A stretch of 57,003 bases of DNA, counting the filler, from Platydemus manokwari (lineage: Eukaryota): the NCBI GenBank assembly GCA_037951405.1. It is 6 parts of 6 records of this genome, joined end to end, with 100 filler letters (N's around TTAATTAATTAA, not from the genome) between each part and the next. Parts side by side here need not be neighbours in the genome. Positions count along the whole stretch, not along the records: positions 1 to 9,527 come from JBBMOY011236653.1; 5 more parts are not named here. One strand, written 5' to 3'. Positions 335 to 10,522 of the stretch are shown here, piece after piece. The position numbers and the translations under genes were made by a program. The notes under the pieces were generated by a model that worked only from the letters and a program-made list of their open reading frames with translations, did no database searches and was not told the origin of the DNA. Every line of letters starts with the position of its first letter. Within the stretch, counting starts at the first letter, position 1.

Positions 335-562
335 ACTTTCGATACAAATATCTGTCAAAATGTTGAATGGAGAAGTGATTCATGTAGAGATCAATAAAAA
401 TGTAAAAATTCTTGATCTAAAATTGAAAATCCAAAAACTGACAGCAATAAATTCAAACGACCAAAAACTGATGTTCAATGGGAGTAATTTGAGTGATGAA
501 TTAACTTTGGAACAATATGGAATCGTAGAGAAATCAGTGTTATTCCTTGTTCAACGATACCG
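335..562 (+). CDS. Ubiquitin-like domain exon (orphan member of the local UBL exon family; phase 2-2)
   Basis: Acceptor tttag|a (334/335) and donor cg|gtaaga (562/563). Encodes (R)LSIQISVKMLNGEVIHVEI...DQKLMFNGSNLSDELTLEQYGIVEKSVLFLVQRY(R), a clear beta-grasp ubiquitin-like pattern with the same intron position and phase as the 4806-6725 array. Confidence 0.8.
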
Positions 563-774
563 GTAAGATTGTCAAGGTATAATATTGTTTGATATTTTAT
601 ATGATTTAAGATTTTTCAATGAAACTTAGAAATGCTCTATATGAACACATATCAGTCAATAATTGAAATCCGATGGATATAATCAAACTTTTTTCACCTT
701 ATTTTATAATTTCAAAATATTTCTAATTTTTATTCACTACCAGATTTTTTTGTTATTTTATAGATAAAATATAC

Positions 775-827
<53 letters not shown>
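775..827. repeat. (TTA)17 microsatellite
   Basis: Perfect TTA run read directly from the sequence. Confidence 0.97.
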
Positions 828-1289
828 GTTAGGAACCAGTTAAGACTATAAACAAAGATCGATTTATTATTGATAAACAAACATTTCATTTTATGATACC
901 AATTACTGATTATAAATTATCACAAAATGACTCGCTACCGGTATAAGGTAGTTATAGTAGTATGTGTTTTATTTTGGGTTGTGATGGTGCTAAGATGCAC
1001 TTTATGAATCAATCAATGTATCACTTCACATTTTTCGTTTTGATATATCCACATCTTTAATTTTACACAACAGACTCGGGACATTCTCGAATGGATGTAC
1101 TTCCCACTCAAACATTATTCTATTCACAATTTTAATAATTATTTTAATAAATTTATAATGCCCAATTGTTAAATGCCAAGATATATCTAACCAGGTTATT
1201 GTGAGCATTTTAAATTAAATTAAAATTTTTAAAGATTTATTTTTATATAAATTTTAATGCTGTATAAAATATTTTTTTATAAAATCACA

Positions 1290-1345: not shown

Positions 1346-1387
1346 CGTTTTTAATGTGTGGTTTTTTAAATAGTAGCGGCTTAAGAC

Positions 1388-1830
1388 CATAAGTGAAAAG
1401 TCAAATTTATCACAGATCGATTGCATTTTCCTTCGAGTACTCGTATCAATCAATTTTCTTCTTTGAAATAGTAAGTTTAGTTCATGCGGGTTGATTATCA
1501 ATTTTCCTTGAATATTTGATTTCAATTCCAGTACCCCCAATAGACCGAATTTCCAACTCAAACACTGTTCAATCAATATTTTAAATAAGTATTTGCATCC
1601 AATCAGGTCTGCAATCCATAATAATCAAATGTCATATGATCTTAAATAATTTCTTTACCATAATTGAAGAGTCAAATTGATCACAGGTCGATCGGATATT
1701 CCACAATTCTCTAGTGTACGCTCATTTTCTAATACTCTTCTTGAAACGATAACCTTTGTGCTTCTGATGTAGCTCCAATTTATTCTACAACCATTATTGA
1801 ATTGATAAATTTCAAGCACAAATTCATTTA
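1388..1830 (-). pseudogene. Inverted two-exon ubiquitin-like pseudogene (paralog of the 4806-6725 array)
   Basis: Exon A (~1830-1659): FVLEI...E*IGATSEAQRLSFQ/[frameshift]RVLENERTLENCGISDRPVINLTLQL. A 50-nt GT-AG phase-2 intron at 1658-1609. Exon B (1608-1388): PDWMQILI*NID*TVFELEI/[fs]VLELKSNIQGKL...LLFQRRKL/[fs]DRSVINL. Shares CACAAAGGTTATCGTTTCAAG with array unit 2. Confidence 0.85.
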
Positions 1831-2699
1831 TATCAGGAATTTCTCTAGAATCTAGTGAAATGGAATATTGTACACCGCCGCATTTAAATTTCTTATTATC
1901 ATCTTTAATATTATAAATAGAATTATAAGGACTTATTGACATTAAACCAATTGCAAATTGAAATCTTTCATATAATCTTAAAGGTACACTAAAATTAAAT
2001 ATTTATTCTGATTTTGTTACTAGGGGATATTGCCACTGCACTATATTTTTGAGACAAAATATTGTGAGATATTATGTAAGGACAAGAATCAAACACGAAA
2101 TTATAATTCATTTACAAAATATAATCATAAGTTAAGGCAAATTATCAGAATATATAATAATAATATATATAATACATTGCAAAATAATGATATTTTCCAT
2201 ACAGTTGACTGATAAATTATCCTCAAACTTTAAGAATCAATATTAAATACTCGAGATACTTCTTACATTTGACTAATGAGTATAAATGCTGCAGAGTTTT
2301 AAAGGTGTAGAAAACATAATGATTTTTTATAAATATTTTCCATTGATATTGAGTTTTAAAAATCAAATCTGAAGAACAAGACTTACGAACAGAAATGTAT
2401 TTTAGCATTTATGTAATGCCATAATTGCTGTCAAATTCAGAATTTTTTCATAATTTCGAAATTTATTTGGATAATTTTTAACAGAAAGATCTAATAAGCA
2501 TTATCAAAGGTTTTGTTTTCAATGCTCATTTTTTGGCTTTAAGAAATGCAAATTAAATATTTTGAAAAACAATTTTTATAATAATAACCACTATTATTTT
2601 TTACGTCATAAACAATAATGGAAAAAATTAAATTACGAAATCTGGACGAATTCTCAAACCTGTTCCAGATAGATGGATACATAATTATTATTCAAACCA

Positions 2700-3100
2700 A
2701 GAATTAGTCCATATGTTAGGATCTAAATCCACAATGAGTCACATAACGACATATTACGCCCACAAGCATAATCAAATAATTAAAATTCCCAAAAGAAATG
2801 AAATCCTATAAATAGAATTTAATAATTACAAAAATAGATTAGAAACTAAAAATAGAATTTTAAAATTCCAGAAATAGAAAAATCGTGATTGGCCACAGTT
2901 ATAACGAAAATTAGTATAAAAGCAGCCGGAGAAACAGAAAAAATCGCCAAAAAGTTACTACAAATAAACATTTATTCGATTAAAGCAGTTATCTAGCAGG
3001 AAACCACGATGAACGACAGAAAATTAATCAGCAAAGAGACAAGCATAGAAATCTCCTCCGCAAGATAACCGATTTAGACAGCGAGGTACAGACCGAATTA
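2700..3100 (+). repeat. LTR-like dispersed repeat, copy 1
   Basis: Colinear blocks (ACGCCCACAA...ATCCTATAAATAGA...AGAATTTTAAAATT) shared with the minus strand of ~13000-13450. Contains a CCTATAAATA TATA-like box. Boundaries approximate. Confidence 0.55.
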
Positions 3101-4762
3101 TTGATTGTCATTTTCATACCGTGTCTAGAGATTCGGTATTAATTAACACTATCTTCGTTTTCTTCCTTCTTTTTAATAATTTTTACTCATTGTGCGGTTC
3201 ACCCGTATTGCGAGTCTTGGTTAAGTGAGCCACACTTCCCCAGTTCTTTGTTAACACATCTAAACTAATTTTATTCTTTTGTTATTGTAGTGATTTTGAT
3301 AAATAATTATATTTTTAGTATCACTGTGTTATCATTATTTATTATATTAATATTTATAAACTACTTATAACATACTTCAATCGAACGCAGTCAATCGTCT
3401 GGAGTTCAGTTGGCACCCTAAGCGAGCATCGTCATAATCAATAAACACGCAGCACTATTCACCCAATAGAAAAAACCAATACATATGTGATTGACTCTTG
3501 AATATTGATTATAAGCTTCTCGTATTAGCTTATTATGACTGTTTGCGTCGAATTTTAATTATCGAAACATTTTAGTCTGATTGCCATTATTTTTTATTAT
3601 TATTGCCGTTTTTTGAATATTTATTGCTTTATTATTTATGTGCCTGTTATTATTTAATGTTTATTTAATTAATTTTTTTATTATTAATGCCATCAATTCA
3701 ACCAAGCTCTTATCTTCTCACATTGAAAACAAAACAGTAAAATATTCATATGATAATAATGTATTCAATAGTAGTGAAACAATTTTTCATAAATTTTATA
3801 ATCAAATGTTAAAACATAAATTAAATTTCTATTACAATCAATTTTTCCAGTGATATTAGTATGGTACGGCTTATGTTTATTTAAGACTGAGCTGATCTGA
3901 GAGATGGGTTTGTTTTAAGATTTGTTTTTGATTGAGCTTAAACGCTTCAATATATACAAAACTCAAGAATTTTTTCTAAAAAATTAACATTCATCTCCGT
4001 AAGCATCAATTCCCTCATTTGGCATGTTGTAAAATTATAAACGAGTTAAGTTAATTAAAAATGGTATTTGTATTTTGTATCAACGTGTATCGTTGTTCTG
4101 TATCTGTACGAAACAAATGAACGTTATTCATACAAAATTGGAAATGAATTAGTAAATTAATTTAAAAAGTAGAGCCCAATATGCTAAATTCGAACCCAGA
4201 TAAATTTGAAGTTATTTCAGATTCATTAATCACTTAATCATGGGTACATGATTTGGTCTAATTTTGATTTAATATCATCATGCCCCTCACAAATAATTTG
4301 ATTTACTCGGCTCAAATAAAATTGTAGATGTCATCAGATTTACTGTCCTGGTGAAATTTTCTTGAATTTTATTTGGATATCGTAGATATAAACTCACCAC
4401 TTAATTTATGGTTTGCAATAACATTAACTCTAAATTAATAACTTTTTATCATTAACAATAGCCTTATTATAATCATCACTGCTGTTGTTTTACTATAACA
4501 TTATAATCATCATTATTTGAATCACATTTTCCGATTTTTATGATTATGTGTGTTGGAGTTTTCTTAATGCAATAATTACTTTAAAATATAAATTACAATA
4601 AAATAATAAATATTTTTCTTATAAATTTTTTGATATTGGATAATTTGAATATGATTGCATTTAATGTATTTAATGATGCTTATACGAATACTTATGATTT
4701 AATGATTTACAATAATTTGTTATCTTCTACATTATATTATTATGGATTTATAATGAGAATAA

Positions 4763-4769
4763 TATAAAA
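4763..4769 (+). promoter_or_regulatory. Possible TATA box of the multi-UBL gene
   Basis: TATAAAA about 34 nt upstream of an initiator-like TCAG (4795-4798) and 43 nt upstream of ATG 4806, which has an in-frame TAG immediately before it. Weak evidence in AT-rich DNA. Confidence 0.3.
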
Positions 4770-4805
4770 GTATTGTAGAAACTGGCCTTAAAATTCAGAG
4801 TTTAG

Positions 4806-5026
4806 ATGCAAATAGTTATTGAAACTATTGATGGTAATACAATTTTATTGGACACATATGAATCCATTTCGATCAAACAATTGAAATTAACAATTCAAGA
4901 CAAAACCGAAACCCAACCAGATGAACAAAAGTTAGTCTTTCAAGGAAGAATATTAAATGATGAGAGTACTTTGAATGAAAACGGGATATTCGATCAATCT
5001 GTGATAAATTTGTTGAGGATTTTAGG
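4806..5026 (+). CDS. UBL array exon 1 (ubiquitin-like domain)
   Basis: MQIVIETIDGNTILLD...EQKLVFQGRILNDESTLNENGIFDQSVINLLRIL; donor gg|gtaaat at 5027. Confidence 0.85.
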
Positions 5027-6725
5027 GTAAATAATTGATTTGAGATCACTCGATATCTAATTGATTATTAATGATATGGTTGGATGCAAATATTTATTAC
5101 AATTATGAATGAAAAACCATTATTATTGGAAATACATGAATCCATGACTGTCAAGCAATTGAAATTAAAACTTGAAGAAAAAATTGGAGCTAAACTAAAA
5201 TCACAAAGGTTATCGTTTCAAGGAGGAGAGTTAGCAGATGAGTATAGCCTCGAGGATTACCGAATATATGATCGATCTGTGATCAGTTTGAATATCGAAT
5301 CAAGGCAATAATGTGATTTGAGATGATTTGACATTCAATAATTGTCTATTGCAGAGGCAATGCCTTGGGAATAATTATTGAAACTGGATGGAAAATCGTT
5401 TGCATTGGAAATGTGCCAGTTGGATACGGTTCGGCAGCTGAAATATGAAATTGATGAAAAAATCAAGGCCAGACCAGATGATCAAAAATTAGTTTTTAAA
5501 GGAGGAATATTGGAAGGTGATGAGCGCTCATTGGATGAATGCGGAATACGCGATAAATCTGTGATAAATCTGGTGACGAGATTGAGGTGATTTGATGGTT
5601 TTGAGATGATTTATTGATTGATCGCCACACAGAGGTGATCCGATCAGTGTGTTTATCAAAGTCAGGTACAACGATGAGTTCGTGTTGGAAATGCACCAGC
5701 TGCACAGGGTTGAAGAGTTGAAATCAAAAATTCAAGACAAAATTGGAATCGAACCAGCAGCTCAACGATTATTGTTTCGTGGAGAAGAAATGGCAAATGA
5801 TCGCACTCTGAAGGATTACAGCATATGCGATGAATCTGTGATTGATTTGGTGAGATTATTGAGGTAATCACGTTGATTGGGATTAATTGCGGGGGTGGGG
5901 GTGTTTAATATGCTATATAGGCCGGGTTGGATTCGAATATCAGTGAAAACAATGGACGGCAAAACGGTTGGCTTTAAAATACCTCACTGCTACAAGATCC
6001 AGCAATTGAAATACAAAATTCGAGACAAACTAGAATTGTCCACAGATGATCAGCGATTGATATTTCAAGGACGAGTGTTAGCGGATGACGAAACGGTGAT
6101 GGGGTGTGGCATACGCGATCAATTTGAGATAAGTTTGACACTTCAATTACGGTAATGAAATGGTTGTGGAATCATTTTATCAATAATTATTCAATAATTA
6201 GACGTTCCCGATCTGGTTGGATGGAAATATTCATCAAAACTGTTGATGGAAAAGCGTTTCCATTGGAAGCATGTCCATTGGATAAGGTCGACCAATTGAA
6301 ATCCAAAATTCAACTGGTAATCGGAACCGATCCTGATGAACAAAAGCTTGTGTTTCAAGGAGTTAAATTAGAAAACGGACGTTCATTGGAGGATTACAGA
6401 ATAGGCGATCAATCTGTGATAAATTTGATTCGATTAATGAAGTATCGATCGATATGAGTTTGAGATGATTTGGTATTCAATTATTGGATGTTACAGCAGT
6501 GGGATGGAAATATTTCTCCAAACGGCAGATGGGAAAAAGCTCGCAATAGAAGTCTTTAAAAAACAAACAATCCGCGATATAAAAAGGAAAAATGAAGAAA
6601 AATGGGGAATAAGTGCCGATGAGCAACGGTTCATATTCCAGGCCACAATTCTCGAAGATGATAAGGCAGTGGAGAATTATAATATTCGTGAGAAAGACAC
6701 TGTTATGCTGTGGTGGGTTTTATAA
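4806..6725 (+). CDS. Tandem multi-ubiquitin-like domain protein, 7 UBL exons (4806-5026, ~5078-5304, 5355-5586, 5633-5863, 5921-6151, 6202-6441, 6497-6725)
   Basis: Seven consecutive divergent UBL units (MxIxIxTxDG...Q[KR]LxFQG..L.D...L..YGI.D.SVINL). Introns 5305-5354 (GC-AG), 5587-5632, 5864-5920, 6152-6201 and 6442-6496 are phase 2 and fall in the R74-equivalent codon. Units 4-7 splice in frame. AATAAA at 6859. Confidence 0.85.
5084..5304 (+). CDS. UBL array exon 2 (intact domain but acceptor apparently lost; GC donor)
   Basis: MQIFITIMNEKPLLLEI...SQRLSFQGGELADEYSLEDYRIYDRSVISL. No AG at the expected acceptor position and an in-frame TGA at 5072. Donor is ag|gcaata at 5305. Confidence 0.7.
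5355..5586 (+). CDS. UBL array exon 3 (frameshifted near its 5' end)
   Basis: Acceptor ttgcag| at 5354. Reads GNALGIIIET, then changes frame near 5385 to DGKSFALEMCQLD...DQKLVFKGG...SVINLVTRL. Exon is 232 nt, not a multiple of 3. Confidence 0.7.
5633..5863 (+). CDS. UBL array exon 4
   Basis: acacag|a ggt gat ccg gives GDPISVFIKVRYNDEFVLEM...AQRLLFRGEEMANDRTLKDYSICDESVIDLVRLL; donor ag|gtaatc; 231 nt. Confidence 0.85.
5921..6151 (+). CDS. UBL array exon 5
   Basis: atatag|g ccg ggt tgg gives PGWIRISVKTMDGKTVGF...DQRLIFQGRVLADDETVMGCGIRDQFEISLTLQL; donor cg|gtaatg; 231 nt. Confidence 0.85.
6202..6441 (+). CDS. UBL array exon 6
   Basis: aattag|a cgt tcc gives RSRSGWMEIFIKTVDGKAFPLE...EQKLVFQGVKLENGRSLEDYRIGDQSVINLIRLM; donor aa|gtatcg; 240 nt. 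Confidence 0.85.
6497..6725 (+). CDS. UBL array exon 7 (terminal)
   Basis: NAGNAG acceptor ttacag|cag| gives SGMEIFLQTADGKKLAIEV...EQRFIFQATILEDDKAVENYNIREKDTVMLWWVL*; no C-terminal GG. Confidence 0.85.
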
Positions 6726-9527
6726 TGTTACTTTAGATAACACATCTAAAGGAGCTCAAAATGGCAAAAATCAATAAGTTGTTATAATAATTGTGATTAG
6801 AATCTGATTCCAGTAGGTGCAGTCTTTAACAGAAATCTAACACAGTTACATATTTATAAATAAATAAAAATAAATACAAACACAGATCAATAAAATATAA
6901 TTGCGGGACAAATTAAATTACGATACGGAATTATTTAGTAAAATAATAAACAAATAACAATGAATTAATTGAGACTAATTTAATTAATTATTGATAGTGT
7001 TATTGGTTTTTGTGTGAAATTTAAGATGCTGGAGAGCTATAAGATTCCTGTTTGCCGATGGCTTTATATATATTATGGCATGATCGTCTGATAACCACGA
7101 AATAGTCACTATATATTGACTCAGATAGTAAAGTGAAAGTATAGTGACTTATATCGATCACTTTAAAGGTATATTTATTGGATTTTTGCATGGACGTTTG
7201 TAATCATTGTTCTTATTGGCTTTGAAATTTGAAGGTAATCGATTTGAATTTAAAGGTCGATTTCTTTAGAAACTGATCCTAGTCTTATACCTCTCACTCA
7301 ACCACTCATATTTCTAGAGCCATCTCGTTAATTTTTCAATCATTACATTTTCGTAAAGTCATCGCATCTTTAATGGATATCTGTACTTCTAACGTTATTA
7401 AATTGTATTTAATCCATATATTTTCTGGAACATTCGCTATAACAATAATAAAATAAAATAATTGTGATATATAATATTCAACCAAATGTAAGGGACATTT
7501 TTCACTAATTTTAAAATTATTAAAATTAATTCAAAATATAACACTAATAATAAAATTCTACATTATAAAGCCATCTTAAAATAACACCAATATTATAAAT
7601 AATAAATTTAGTGAGATGTTAATGTTCTTGAATTGAATTTACTTGTTTCTGGTTCTGTTTTAAAAATTGACACCACACTACATTATTTGGGTACTGATGC
7701 AGCAAAACATTCATTACGAATTGAATAGAATATAATAATTTGATGATTGATTGGAAGAAATTGCAGATGGGAAATTGCAAGATCAGAGACTATAGTCTGG
7801 TTTAAACAAAAACATGTGTTGGAAAGTTTATTGTTGGAAAATTCAATATATTTACTTTTTGAAGTGTTTATTTTTGTTTGTAATGTTGGTCATTCTCAAT
7901 CTTTTGAGCATCTGATAAACCATAATAGTTCAATGTTTTAAATGTTGATACATCGAATTATTAATGTCAATATAAATTCTGATCATTTGCTAGTTTAACT
8001 TTGACCTAAGTGAACATGTGCTATATAAATAACTAGAAAATAGTGAGAATATATTGCGATTAGCATATGAATTAAGTCACGTTATATGAAATAAATAAAA
8101 GTCAAGTTCAATAACTGATTTATATATAATAAATTTTAATATACGTAAAAGTTCATTGCTCTATTTAAATGAAAATAATAAAAGGATTCCACTTCCAAGA
8201 CTGCTGTGGTGTTAAATTTCATTATACCTTGGTAGTAAAATCTCTGGTAATAAATGTCACTTATACAATTGTAAACAAATCAAGTCAGTCAAAGATCGTA
8301 AGCCGATTATTTTCTCATTTTATCCCTGAGTTTTATATAAGCCAGATCAATCTTGCATTTGGAGATAAATAATAATCTAATTATTTTGTCTTCTGCTTTT
8401 AATCTCTTTAACTTTTCTAATTATTTAAATTATAATACTTTATTTAATAACTTTATTAAATATCTGAACAAAATACTGTCAGGCCTGAATCTTGATAGAA
8501 GATTTCTAAATTACTTGATGGATAGACATGGTGAGTTCATTATTTACTTCTTCAATTTTTTGAAATAGATCAAGAAGACAGAGAAATTCATGGATTCCGA
8601 AATAATTTTTTTAAACGGCTACTATCAAAGCGTGGAATTCTTAAAATTCTTGAGTCAGTTATATCGAAATTTGTCATATAAATTTTTTTCAGCTTTTTAT
8701 AAACCGTACTTATTTAATTTTCTTTTCATAACTCGTCATTAGCAATCGACTTGAATTGTTGTTGTCCACATATAATATTCAATAGTTAGCTTGTGTTCTC
8801 ATTTCTACCCAATCCATTCTTAAATAGTAATTTTTCGCAGCAGGAAGCAAATTTTGATGATTTGAGAAAATTCTTAATTTCTTCTCTATTAAATCCAGGT
8901 GATGTAATTAATTAATGTGATACGTTATTCAGAATTTAAATTTTTTTAATTCTAAATTATTTCAAAAAAAATTCGCCGATGCAATAAAATCATTTTTATC
9001 TTTGAACCAAACAAAGTGTTTCAAAATAATAGTGACAATTTCAAAATAATTATATAATTGGGCATCTTTTAATAAAATATCATTTAAAAATTATAAACGG
9101 AAATCTAGGTTATTCCAAGAGTTTATGGCTGATTATTAAAAATTGCTTATGAAGTAAAAATGATTTTACTACTTGAGTATTTAAAGATCCTATAGCGTTT
9201 TTACACAGTTATTTACGTGATAGTCATAACTCAAAATTGAACTGATTTAAAAGAGAAATTAGGAAACTTTTCTTATCTCCCTTACTTGTCACCCTTTTAG
9301 ACAAGTCTTCAAAAACAGGATGCAACCACCAAGTGAATATGTAAGGGAATTACAATTGTCTTTCAGCTGATAAATTTGACTGAGATAAGGCAACCTGATT
9401 ACAGGACACTCGAAAGAATCTATGAAAGGGTTATTACTTTTTATACTAGGAAACTTAATTTGTGTATAAACCGCTACTTGTTAATGAAACACAGATTTGT
9501 AACTAACTGATAAGTTCTGACAAGATA

Positions 9528-9627
9528 NNNNNNNNNNNNNNNNNNNNNNNNNNNNNNNNNNNNNNNNNNNNTTAATTAATTAANNNNNNNNNNNNNNNNN
9601 NNNNNNNNNNNNNNNNNNNNNNNNNNN
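9528..9627. other. Artificial contig-joining linker (44 N + TTAATTAATTAA + 44 N)
   Basis: Exactly 100 nt. The central palindrome gives stops in all six frames. Identical at five sites. Confidence 0.97.
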
Positions 9628-10522
9628 TATAAAAATTTTTTAATATTTTTCAAATTATCGATTATTTCATTAAATAAACATTTTGAGTATTTATTTATTA
9701 AATTTTGGGGTTCTGGTTATCTCGAGTAAAATATTCACTGAAATATTGTTAAATCTCAAATATAACTCGAAATAAAATTTTATTTCCCAACTAAACACAT
9801 CGTAAACCAAATTTTTTTTTCTTAAAAAACATATATTTTGTTTTAGTCTGAATATAGATAAACTTATTTTTGATTAGGCACCTCGCTCTTTTTATTCTAT
9901 AGGAATTTTAGTTAAAGAGTAAAACAAACTAAAATATATTTAAGGATAAACATAAGTGTCTTCATGATGCTGTTTCACAAGTCTCCGAGTCGGCTTATAA
10001 CAATAAAGATTTCTGTGATTGGTTCAAATGTTCATCTTCTTGGAGGTTTTCTATGTAGACTTTCCTCATTTCTCATTCGTATCTGTTAATTGTTCTTGGT
10101 TTTCAGTGATTTGTTATTGATTGGAAAGCTCGTGCCATGACGAATTTTTTTTAAATCAGCACGAGCTTTGTACCTTAAAAAACCGAATATGAATGTGATC
10201 TCGGGTTTGTCCAGAGCGATATTTGACAGGACTTTGCTATTATTCGGGTCCCAGGATCCAAGGAGATAAATGCAGATTATCTCCAGGCTGCTGTTGTATT
10301 ACGCGTGTCAAATACTCTCATTAGTCTTACGCCTATCTCAATGATGTTTATTTGCTCATTGAACCCATAAATTATATCGTTATAGCTTAAGACTCGAATA
10401 TAATCCAATATAAGTTTAAGAAAACTATTAATAGCTATCAGTATTAGTTATATAATTTTTTTATTTAGTTGACAATATTTTTTAATAATTTTAAATAAAA
10501 TATATTTCGAAATTTTATTTAG

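What the first reader, a model, noticed from the sequence alone, without database searches (positions are those of the whole stretch)
4806..6725. Exon-modular array of seven divergent ubiquitin-like domains: a genetically encoded pseudo-polyubiquitin chain
Seen: the seven short UBL ORFs are exons of one gene, one domain per exon, separated by ~46-57 nt phase-2 introns at the codon equivalent to ubiquitin R74. Spliced linkers are SR-GNA, LR-GDP, LR-PGW, LR-RSRSGW and MN-SG, and the protein ends WWVL, so no sequential junction has LRGG. Known: true polyubiquitin genes have near-identical repeats with LRGG junctions, and ISG15/FAT10 have two domains and a terminal GG. Inference: a lineage-specific multi-UBL protein that is not DUB-processed or conjugated, and could act as a linear-chain mimic, a decoy for ubiquitin receptors or pathogen DUBs, or a proteasome-binding scaffold. 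I do not recognise it as a named family.
Basis: partly seen in the sequence, partly recalled or inferred. Interest (0 to 1): 0.85.

Follow-up and report, generated by a model that had tools for sequence, protein, structure and literature searches.

The report
Damaged copy of multi-ubiquitin-like gene family

Summary
Seven PF00240 units lie head to tail at 4806-6725 (+). Five mini-introns of 46-57 nt sit in phase 2 in the codon equivalent to ubiquitin R74.

The "one gene, seven exons" reading fails for this copy at two junctions:
- Junction 1 has a donor but no acceptor (AG is TG at 5072-5073), so unit 1 runs into TAA.
- Unit 3 lacks 2 nt after 5383, so SR-GNA continues out of frame. The only read-derived contig across that spot has the 2 nt.

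Units 3-7 do join into one open frame.

The same 911-Mb, AT-rich genome holds about 20 contigs with paralogous arrays of 6-8 units. Across 17 arrays:
- 59 of 66 junctions have an in-frame phase-2 GT/GC-AG intron.
- 40 of 40 internal exons are multiples of 3.
- Units group by position in the array.
- The promoter-proximal sequence is conserved.

The family architecture is therefore well supported by comparison, but not by RNA.

Ubiquitin's L8/I44/H68/V70 patch and K48/K63 are not kept. I read the product as an uncleavable string of distinct beta-grasp modules, not a polyubiquitin mimic. Divergent multi-UBL proteins are common in databases. None is close to this family.

The parts
4700..4805 (+). 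Conserved upstream region (putative promoter and 5' UTR). A/T-rich TATA-like blocks lie at about 4747-4769, and the motif TTAAAATTCAGAGTTTAG sits directly before the ATG.
   Evidence: About 120 nt upstream of exon 1 align among 10 paralogs, with blocks conserved in at least 9 of 10.
4806..5026 (+). Exon 1 / UBL unit 1. ATG at 4806. The phase-2 donor GT at 5027-5028 is intact. Read-through ends at TAA 5028-5030 (...LLRILG*).
   Evidence: PF00240 E 1.6e-16. Sits in the position-1 clade, support 99/87. Donor and stop seen.
5027..5074 (+). Degenerate intron 1. The donor is present but the acceptor is lost (TG at 5072-5073 where paralogs have AG). The only AG (5043-5044) is 18 nt from the donor.
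   Evidence: No in-frame intron found. Alignment with 7 paralogs. A Logan contig covers 4570-5343 with 0 differences (record 2).
5075..5304 (+). Exon 2 / UBL unit 2. It has ATG at 5084 where paralogs have ATA/ATT (Ile).
   Evidence: PF00240 E 3.8e-15. Position-2 clade, support 97/84. Alignment.
5305..5354 (+). Intron 2: 50 nt, GC-AG, phase 2.
   Evidence: The GC donor is conserved in 8 of 9 paralogs.
5355..5586 (+). Exon 3 / UBL unit 3. It is 232 nt, not a multiple of 3. Two nt are missing after 5383, and the UBL frame is open only from 5375.
   Evidence: PF00240 E 4.5e-17. The deletion is seen against 8 paralogs. The only Logan contig across 5344-5385 carries the extra CT plus T5365A and G5369A (tables 3, 4, 8).
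5587..5632 (+). Intron 3: 46 nt, GT-AG, phase 2. Linker LR-GDP.
5633..5863 (+). Exon 4 / UBL unit 4 (231 nt).
   Evidence: PF00240 E 9.1e-17. Position-4 clade, support 98/88.
5864..5920 (+). Intron 4: 57 nt, GT-AG, phase 2. Linker LR-PGW.
5921..6151 (+). Exon 5 / UBL unit 5 (231 nt).
   Evidence: PF00240 E 3.8e-15.
6152..6201 (+). Intron 5: 50 nt, GT-AG, phase 2. Linker LR-RSRSGW.
6202..6441 (+). Exon 6 / UBL unit 6 (240 nt).
   Evidence: PF00240 E 4e-17. AlphaFold2 model has pLDDT 93. It superposes on ubiquitin with TM about 0.9 and rmsd 0.6-0.8 A.
6442..6496 (+). Intron 6: 55 nt, GT-AG, phase 2. Linker MN-SG.
6497..6725 (+). Last exon / UBL unit 7. It ends WWVL and then TAA (6723-6725), with no GG.
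   Evidence: PF00240 E 3e-17. Groups with last-position units of paralogs.
342..563 (+). Solitary eighth UBL unit of first-exon type. The family 5' motif TTGAAATTTAGA precedes it, the start codon position reads ATA, and a GTAAG donor follows. No downstream partner exons were found.
   Evidence: PF00240 E 9.2e-17. Sequence. Groups with a second sub-family on contig C1195876.
1385..1741 (-). Decayed UBL relics on the opposite strand.
   Evidence: Weak family-HMM hits of 17.5 and 19.4 bits. 72-74% DNA identity to the array at 1402-1527 and 1549-1790.

Best explanation
The locus is one diverged member of a large gene family derived from ubiquitin and found, so far, only in this genome. It carries at least one disabling splice-site change.

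A typical family gene has a conserved A/T-rich promoter-proximal region. Exon 1 starts at Met1 of the first ubiquitin-like domain. Five to seven further exons each encode exactly one ubiquitin-like domain. The exons are separated by stereotyped mini-introns of about 50 nt, placed after the second base of the codon equivalent to ubiquitin R74.

Splicing (inferred) gives a cytosolic protein of 6-8 different beta-grasp modules. The joints have the form L-R / x-G-W-(I/M), one residue longer than a ubiquitin-ubiquitin joint. GG at the joints is rare (4 of 59 across the family, none in this copy), and no last exon seen ends in GG. The protein should therefore be neither cut into monomers by ordinary deubiquitinases nor conjugated.

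Each array position has its own conserved sequence, while ubiquitin's receptor-binding patch and its chain-forming lysines are not kept. The most likely role is a multivalent scaffold or adaptor made of distinct modules. It is not a copy of a linear ubiquitin chain.

In the window's copy, exon 1 cannot be joined to exon 2. Likely outputs are a 74-residue single domain, or exon 1 spliced to a later acceptor. Exon 1 joined to exons 4-7 gives an intact 383-residue, five-domain frame. Alternatively the copy is a young pseudogene.
For: Domains:
- Seven PF00240 hits.
- The profile's best solved relative is ubiquitin itself, aligned without gaps.
- The unit 6 model has pLDDT 93 and TM about 0.9 to ubiquitin.

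Family:
- At least 150 PF00240 matches over the cut-off in the genome, in about 20 contigs with arrays of roughly 280-nt period.
- The nearest paralog is 78% identical in DNA.

Splicing, by comparison with paralogs:
- 59 of 66 junctions in 17 arrays have an in-frame phase-2 intron of 39-76 nt (mode 50), with 52 GT and 7 GC donors.
- 40 of 40 internal exons are multiples of 3 (mode 231 or 234).
- Reading through any donor hits TAA or TGA at once.
- Units 3-7 of the window join into one open frame.

Age of the architecture: units cluster by position, not by array. Supports are position 1 99/87, position 3 99/94 and position 4 98/88.

Promoter: the upstream 120 nt are conserved in 10 paralogs.

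Protein-level constraint:
- Core residues are kept (K27 96%, Q41 100%, L43, F45, L50 and I61 at 89-95%) while the surface varies.
- Median dN/dS is 0.36-0.65.
- Only 6 of 150 units contain stops.

Lesions. Lesion 1 lies in a read-derived contig with no differences.
Against: - No RNA run holds the locus, so no junction has been seen in a transcript.
- dN/dS near 0.55 is weak constraint and would also fit a mix of live genes and pseudogenes.
- No family member was found in about 15 billion public proteins, so neither expression nor conservation in other species is shown.
- Units 2 and 3 still have intact domain frames and ordinary dN/dS. That argues against long-standing skipping or decay, so the lesions are either recent or, for the 2-nt gap, an assembly error.
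- The scaffold role is inference from sequence only.
Confidence: 0.68

Rival explanations
1. One reading: all seven units are exons of one intact gene. Its product is a seven-domain, uncleavable mimic of a linear polyubiquitin chain that decoys ubiquitin receptors, pathogen deubiquitinases or the proteasome.
For: - The family architecture supports multi-exon genes.
- Five of the six junctions have the stated introns.
- The only read-derived contig across the 2-nt gap has an intact frame, so that lesion may be an artefact.
- The fold is ubiquitin-like at 0.6-0.8 A rmsd.
Against: - Junction 1 has no acceptor in the assembly, and the same sequence stands in an independent contig with 0 differences over 4570-5343.
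- The L8/I44/H68/V70 patch that ubiquitin receptors read is not conserved, and K48 and K63 are replaced.
- The joints are one residue longer than in linear ubiquitin.
Confidence: 0.07
2. The arrays, here and in the whole family, are non-functional: decaying duplicates of an old polyubiquitin-like gene that are not expressed as proteins.
For: - There is no RNA evidence and no homologue in protein databases.
- dN/dS is 0.5-0.6.
- This copy has lesions. The same window holds a start-less solo unit and decayed relics.
- Seven of 66 junctions are broken.
Against: - Units as far apart as 26-47% identity still score E about 1e-15 to 1e-17 against PF00240.
- 144 of 150 units have no stop.
- 40 of 40 internal exons keep a length divisible by 3, and 59 of 66 junctions keep both splice sites.
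- Buried core residues are conserved while surface residues vary.
- The promoter region is conserved.
- Position-specific clades show the architecture survived many duplications.
Confidence: 0.12
3. The product is a precursor that a dedicated protease cuts at the conserved L-R / x-G-W joints into free, non-identical ubiquitin-like proteins.
For: - The joints are stereotyped: R 66% at position 0, G 45% at +2 and W 40% at +3.
- A few paralogs still read RGG-A-ME, a relic of a cleavable ancestor.
- Many internal units keep Met at ubiquitin position 1 (39%).
Against: - Only 4 of 59 joints have GG. Ordinary deubiquitinases need G75-G76 (textbook knowledge, not tested here).
- Much of the R conservation is explained by the splice-site consensus AG|GT falling in that codon.
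- The last units end without GG.
Confidence: 0.07
4. Each unit is a separate small gene, or the units are separate cistrons, so there are no introns at all.
For: - Every unit frame is closed by a stop 0-5 codons after the domain.
- Units 1 and 2 start with ATG.
Against: - Most internal units lack a start codon at the right place. I is as common as M at position 1.
- Only the region before unit 1 carries the conserved upstream sequence.
- The spacers are 39-76 nt with conserved GT/GC and AG ends at fixed phase. Independent genes would not need that.
Confidence: 0.03

Closest known systems
Polyubiquitin genes (UBB/UBC type); this genome's own copy is on contig C1927717
   Same: Head-to-tail ubiquitin-fold repeats in one reading frame. 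The units are closer to ubiquitin than to any other solved UBL: they align without gaps and the best PDB hits are all ubiquitin. A few paralog joints still read RGG-x-M, so descent from a polyubiquitin-like gene is likely.
   Different: True polyubiquitin has identical repeats, LRLRGG-MQIF joints, a 228-nt period and no introns between repeats. This is seen in this genome at L045. The family instead has 26-47% identical units, an intron in every joint, one extra residue per joint, and lacks GG at 55 of 59 joints and at every last-exon end seen.
Rhizarian polyubiquitin with 1-2 inserted residues at monomer junctions (PMC3014934)
   Same: One extra residue (A, S or T there; A or W here) sits between the end of one monomer and Met1 of the next. 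The paralog joints RGG-A-MEIF look the same.
   Different: The rhizarian genes keep identical, cleavable ubiquitin monomers. Here the monomers are diverged and GG is lost. This genome's canonical polyubiquitin has no insertion, so the feature belongs to the family and not to the lineage.
ISG15 and FAT10 (tandem two-UBL modifiers)
   Same: Diverged ubiquitin-like domains fused in tandem by a short linker that is not cleaved.
   Different: ISG15 and FAT10 have two domains and a C-terminal GG used for conjugation (general knowledge; see e.g. PMC10693564, PMC3248901). The family has 6-8 domains and no terminal GG.
Uncharacterised divergent multi-UBL proteins in public protein sets (e.g. diatom Cylindrotheca closterium CAJ1957214.1, 1420 aa, 16 units; a Pseudo-nitzschia model, 1527 aa)
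   Same: Seven to 26 ubiquitin-family domains in a row, 26-60% identical to each other, with almost no RGG joints.
   Different: They are separate origins. Their units, like ours, are closest to ubiquitin itself and not to each other, and no hit exceeds about 50-55% identity to any family unit. None has a described function. Their exon structure was not examined.
Arabidopsis polyubiquitin-like genes UBQ7/8/9/12 (from memory; Callis et al. 1995, not retrieved here)
   Same: Polyubiquitin-derived genes whose repeats have diverged from ubiquitin.
   Different: As far as I recall they stay much closer to ubiquitin and keep the repeat joints.

Membership tests
Ubiquitin family domain (Pfam PF00240, beta-grasp fold) | Significant match to the family profile over the whole domain | tested here: met
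   All seven units score 55.8-62.6 bits against a cut-off of 25.4, covering 67-72 of 72 profile positions.
Ubiquitin family domain (Pfam PF00240, beta-grasp fold) | Beta-grasp fold (beta-beta-alpha-beta-beta, short helix, beta) | tested here: met
   The unit 6 model has pLDDT 93. TM is 0.87-0.95 and rmsd 0.6-1.3 A to ubiquitin chains.
Polyubiquitin precursor | Near-identical repeats | tested here: not met
   Units are 26-47% identical. The genome's real polyubiquitin repeats are identical (L045).
Polyubiquitin precursor | LRGG directly followed by Met1 at every joint (deubiquitinase cleavage site) | tested here: not met
   No window joint has GG. Only 4 of 59 family joints do, and those have an extra residue before Met.
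Polyubiquitin precursor | Ubiquitin recognition surface and chain lysines conserved (L8, I44, H68, V70, K48, K63) | tested here: not met
   All six positions are variable or replaced across 89 units.
Conjugatable tandem UBL modifiers (ISG15, FAT10) | Two UBL domains and a free or exposable C-terminal GG | tested here: not met
   There are 6-8 domains. Ends are WWVL, IDLVS, IDLIS, KRHS and similar.
The multi-UBL family defined here (paralogs in this genome) | Exon-per-domain arrays with phase-2 mini-introns in the R74 codon, a conserved upstream region, and position-specific units | tested here: met
   The window units fall into the positional clades. They share the upstream region and five of the introns.
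The multi-UBL family defined here (paralogs in this genome) | Continuous spliced reading frame from exon 1 to the last exon | tested here: not met
   The intron-1 acceptor is absent and exon 3 is 232 nt. The second defect is contradicted by a read-derived contig.
The multi-UBL family defined here (paralogs in this genome) | Spliced transcript and protein exist | not testable with these tools
   No RNA run holds the locus. No family protein was found in public protein collections.

The most novel reading that the evidence does not exclude
The family is expressed and encodes a previously undescribed class of ubiquitin-derived proteins in what is probably an invertebrate animal. These would be uncleavable chains of six to eight non-equivalent beta-grasp modules, each array position having its own partner surface. 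The family has expanded to dozens of fast-evolving copies, which would fit a conflict-driven role such as immunity or defence against parasites. It would be held together by a family-specific 50-nt intron whose internal motif (TTTGAGATGATTT) acts as a splicing element.
Probability: 0.4. Interest if true: 0.6.

Novelty: new variant of a known kind. Interest (0 to 1): 0.45.

Why it matters
If expressed, the family shows another way evolution has reused polyubiquitin. The repeat joints are frozen by loss of GG and insertion of an intron in each joint, and the repeats are then free to diverge into position-specific modules. Symmetric phase-2 exons let domains be added, lost or skipped without breaking the frame. 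That may explain arrays of 6, 7 and 8 units, and may let this damaged copy still give a five-domain product.

The database search shows that divergent multi-UBL proteins arose many times, in diatoms and others, yet none has a known function. A large, tractable family in one genome would be a good entry point.

For the scan, the lesson is narrower. Its two unchecked junctions are exactly where this copy is broken.

Tried and rejected
- **RNA evidence.** The look-up of sequencing runs found no RNA run. The one holder (X1, kind unknown) is kept as contigs that follow the genomic sequence through introns 4-6. Its listed joints are paralog cross-matches and not splice junctions.
- **Close relatives in other organisms.**
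  - The exhaustive profile search listed only polyubiquitins and unrelated multi-UBL proteins in its top 150. A family protein with 5 or more units would have scored inside that list.
  - The word-index search (41-130 aa) gave 2 hits. One is a giant-virus UBL and the other a lone UBL in a eukaryotic metagenome contig.
- **Identifying the organism.**
  - A retroelement gag from a family contig matched a Logan contig of SRR1706142 at 91%. That accession is in no searchable paper, so the organism stays unknown.
  - Canonical ubiquitin genes sit in equally AT-rich contigs, so the family is not obviously from a contaminant.
- **Rejected ideas.**
  - Intron-encoded RNA or a hairpin: introns fold no better than shuffles, with one exception at z -2.0.
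  - No Rfam family or tRNA was found in the window.
  - Tandem Repeats Finder does not see the 280-nt array because the units are too diverged.
  - A cryptic acceptor for intron 1: none exists in any frame.
- **Literature.** Searches for a named family of 6-8 tandem diverged UBLs found nothing.
Full report
**1. What is in the sequence**

Seven open frames on the + strand between 4806 and 6725 each match the Pfam ubiquitin family. E-values run from 1.6e-16 to 3.8e-15 and scores are 55.8-62.6 bits against a cut-off of 25.4. The units are only 26-47% identical to unit 1.

A profile of the units finds ubiquitin itself as the nearest solved protein, aligned without gaps over 73-74 positions. An AlphaFold2 model of unit 6 has pLDDT 93. 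It superposes on ubiquitin chains with TM about 0.9 and rmsd 0.6-0.8 A. The domain observation is real and far beyond chance.

**2. The junctions**

Five spacers are good mini-introns:

| Intron | Coordinates | Length | Ends |
|---|---|---|---|
| 2 | 5305-5354 | 50 nt | GC-AG |
| 3 | 5587-5632 | 46 nt | GT-AG |
| 4 | 5864-5920 | 57 nt | GT-AG |
| 5 | 6152-6201 | 50 nt | GT-AG |
| 6 | 6442-6496 | 55 nt | GT-AG |

All lie after the second base of the codon equivalent to ubiquitin R74. Units 3 (from 5375) to 7 join into one open frame of about 380 codons ending WWVL-TAA.

Two junctions fail.

- **Junction 1 (unit 1 to unit 2).** The donor is intact (GG|GTAAAT at 5027) but no acceptor follows. An exhaustive search found no in-frame GT/GC..AG solution. 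In an alignment with seven paralogs, the window has TG at 5072-5073 where all others have CAG. Unit 1 therefore reads into TAA at 5028-5030. A contig assembled from reads of a public run covers 4570-5343 without a single difference (record 2), so this is not an assembly slip. Unit 2 has ATG at 5084 where paralogs have an Ile codon.
- **Junction 2 (unit 2 to unit 3).** Exon 3 is 232 nt. Compared with eight paralogs it lacks 2 nt after 5383. The spliced frame after SR-GNA is therefore wrong and stops 30 codons later. At 5365 and 5369 the only read-derived contig laid on the window carries the other letters, and the same contig carries the extra CT (tables 3, 4 and 8). With them the exon reads GNAMEIIIETLDGK, the family consensus. 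This second lesion may thus be an assembly artefact or a minor haplotype. The stretch lies in the most repeated part of the family, where the read contigs break up.

**3. A large family with the same architecture**

The window's genome is 911 Mb in about 2 million contigs, with 23-33% GC in all loci looked at. It has at least 150 PF00240 matches above the cut-off.

Apart from canonical genes, these matches form arrays of 6-8 units with a period of about 280 nt, on about 20 contigs. The canonical genes are an intron-free three-repeat polyubiquitin with LRLRGG-MQIF joints, a ubiquitin-L40 fusion and a ubiquitin-S27a fusion. The nearest paralog of the window's array is 78% identical in DNA.

In 17 arrays:
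- 59 of 66 neighbouring units are linked by an in-frame, phase-2 intron of 39-76 nt (mode 50). Donors are 52 GT and 7 GC.
- The GC donor is specific to intron 2 and conserved in 8 of 9 paralogs.
- All 40 internal exons have lengths divisible by three, mostly 231 or 234.
- Reading through a donor always meets TAA or TGA at once.

About 120 nt upstream of exon 1, including A/T-rich TATA-like blocks and the sequence just before the ATG, are conserved among ten paralogs. Paralogs also share a 3' flank that the window lacks.

In a maximum-likelihood tree of 90 units, units group by their position in the array and not by array. Supports are position 1 99/87, position 3 99/94, position 4 98/88 and last position 95/92. 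The multi-exon architecture therefore predates the expansion, and whole genes were duplicated.

**4. Is the family coding?**

- Only 6 of 150 units contain a stop.
- Buried core positions are conserved across 89 units (K27 96%, Q41 100%, L43, F45, L50 and I61 at 89-95%) while surface positions vary.
- Median pairwise dN/dS within positional classes is 0.36-0.65. This indicates purifying selection that is weak, or mixed with diversifying selection or pseudogenes.
- The window's units are not outliers in this respect.
- Unit 3 stands out for low dS (0.21). Read-contig depth there is very high, up to about 950 against about 10-12 for unique sequence. That suggests many near-identical copies or gene conversion. 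Summed contig depth is not a copy number.

No RNA run was available. Splicing and expression are therefore inferred from comparison alone.

**5. What the product would be**

The joints follow the pattern L-R / x-G-W-(I/M): R 66%, G 45%, W 40%. They are one residue longer than a ubiquitin-ubiquitin joint. Only 4 of 59 contain GG, and two of those read RGG-A-ME, a likely relic of a polyubiquitin-like ancestor. Part of the Arg conservation follows simply from the AG|GT splice consensus sitting in that codon.

No last exon seen ends in GG. Cutting by ordinary deubiquitinases and conjugation are therefore unlikely. This is an inference from the known need for G75-G76.

Ubiquitin's recognition surface is not kept:
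- L8 is variable.
- I44 is V 32%, S 16%, I 13%, R 9%.
- H68 is N or D.
- V70 is variable.
- K48 is G, R or A.
- K63 is D in 73%.

It favours a string of distinct modules with position-specific surfaces, acting as a scaffold or adaptor. I hold that last step with modest confidence, because it rests on sequence only.

**6. What this copy can make**

With junction 1 broken, the transcript from the conserved promoter could do one of three things:
- End translation after unit 1 (74 residues).
- Splice the intact exon-1 donor to a later acceptor.
- Be a young pseudogene.

Because all introns are phase 2, exon 1 joined to exons 4-7 gives an intact 383-residue, five-domain frame. Joined to exon 3, it is in frame only if the 2-nt gap is an artefact.

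The ATG of unit 2 is preceded by out-of-frame ATGs and no acceptor, so independent translation is not favoured (read directly from the sequence).

**7. Comparison with what is known**

The exhaustive profile search gave 48,613 hits. Its top 150 are polyubiquitins and long proteins with 7-26 diverged UBL domains and almost no RGG. Among them are diatom proteins annotated only as "ubiquitin-like domain-containing".

None is more than about 50-55% identical to any family unit, which is the same distance as ubiquitin itself. A family protein with five or more units would have ranked inside that list, and none did. The word-index search found only an unrelated giant-virus UBL and a lone eukaryotic UBL.

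Diverged, uncleavable multi-UBL proteins are thus a recurrent but uncharacterised theme. This family is an independent instance, with a distinctive exon-per-domain gene structure. Literature searches found no named family. The one-residue insertion at joints parallels the rhizarian polyubiquitin insertion (PMC3014934), but this genome's own polyubiquitin lacks it.

**8. Verdict**

The domains, five introns, linkers and ending are right. The claim of one seven-exon gene is wrong for this copy.
The multi-UBL, non-processed, non-conjugated product is plausible at family level. The polyubiquitin-mimic role is weakened, and the locus is a damaged member of a big family and not a unique gene.
- Novelty: a new variant of a known kind.
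- Interest is moderate. The family is large, undescribed and structurally neat, but expression is unshown, the organism is unidentified, and similar architectures are common in databases.

Noticed in passing
window 342-563 (+): An eighth UBL unit of first-exon type. The family's 5' motif TTGAAATTTAGA precedes it. The start position reads ATA instead of ATG, and a GTAAG phase-2 donor follows. No downstream UBL exons lie on this strand until 4806. It groups with a second sub-family seen on contig C1195876 (9225-10267).
   Followed up: partly
window 1385-1790 (-): Decayed UBL fragments on the opposite strand, 72-74% identical in DNA to units 1-3 of the array. The region is therefore a small cluster of live-looking and dead family copies.
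   Followed up: partly
introns of the window (5305-5354, 5587-5632, 6442-6496) and of 16 paralogous arrays: The mini-introns are stereotyped. 37 of 59 carry TTTGAGATGATTT (2 or fewer mismatches) about 12 nt after the donor, and many also carry TTCAATAATTG about 20 nt before the acceptor. Introns at different array positions are at least as alike (66-69%) as the exons (59-64%). They show no RNA structure. A family-specific splicing signal or intron-biased gene conversion could explain this.
   Followed up: partly
window 5310-5612: Read-contig depth rises to 250-950, against about 10-12 for the flanks. Exon 3 also has the lowest dS (0.21) of all positions. Exon 3 and its introns seem to be the most copied or most homogenised part of the family.
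   Followed up: partly
L031/L032 (contig C1195876, 16.2 kb): One contig carries three arrays on the same strand: seven units at 1723-3622, two diverged units at 5659-6298, and four units at 9225-10267. Family genes are therefore clustered in tandem.
   Followed up: no
L033:4032-4153: Between units 5 and 6 of this paralog, the intron-like sequence is triplicated in 27-nt steps. The open frame reads DDLLIDRRQDELLIDHRWNDLLIDHRWNDLLIDQR, which gives several alternative in-frame acceptors.
   Followed up: no
L045 (contig C1927717:4167-4865), L009, L006, L007: The genome's canonical ubiquitin genes were found: a three-repeat, intron-free polyubiquitin ending LRLRGG-stop, a ubiquitin-L40 fusion and a ubiquitin-S27a fusion. 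Its ubiquitin has Ser at position 19.
   Followed up: partly
window 775-831: (TTA)19 microsatellite.
   Followed up: no
L017:2315-3163, L035:5142-5723 (-): Retroelement remains (a gag with a zinc knuckle, and a reverse transcriptase) lie next to family arrays. The gag is 91% identical to a protein from a Logan contig of run SRR1706142, which may be the same or a closely related species.
   Followed up: partly
L049-L052 (metagenome scaffolds): The best short database hit to the unit profile (P0161, 104 aa) is a lone UBL gene in a giant-virus-like context, next to ribonucleotide reductase, dUTPase, a family-X DNA polymerase and a Pox_A22-like resolvase. It is unrelated to the family.
   Followed up: no
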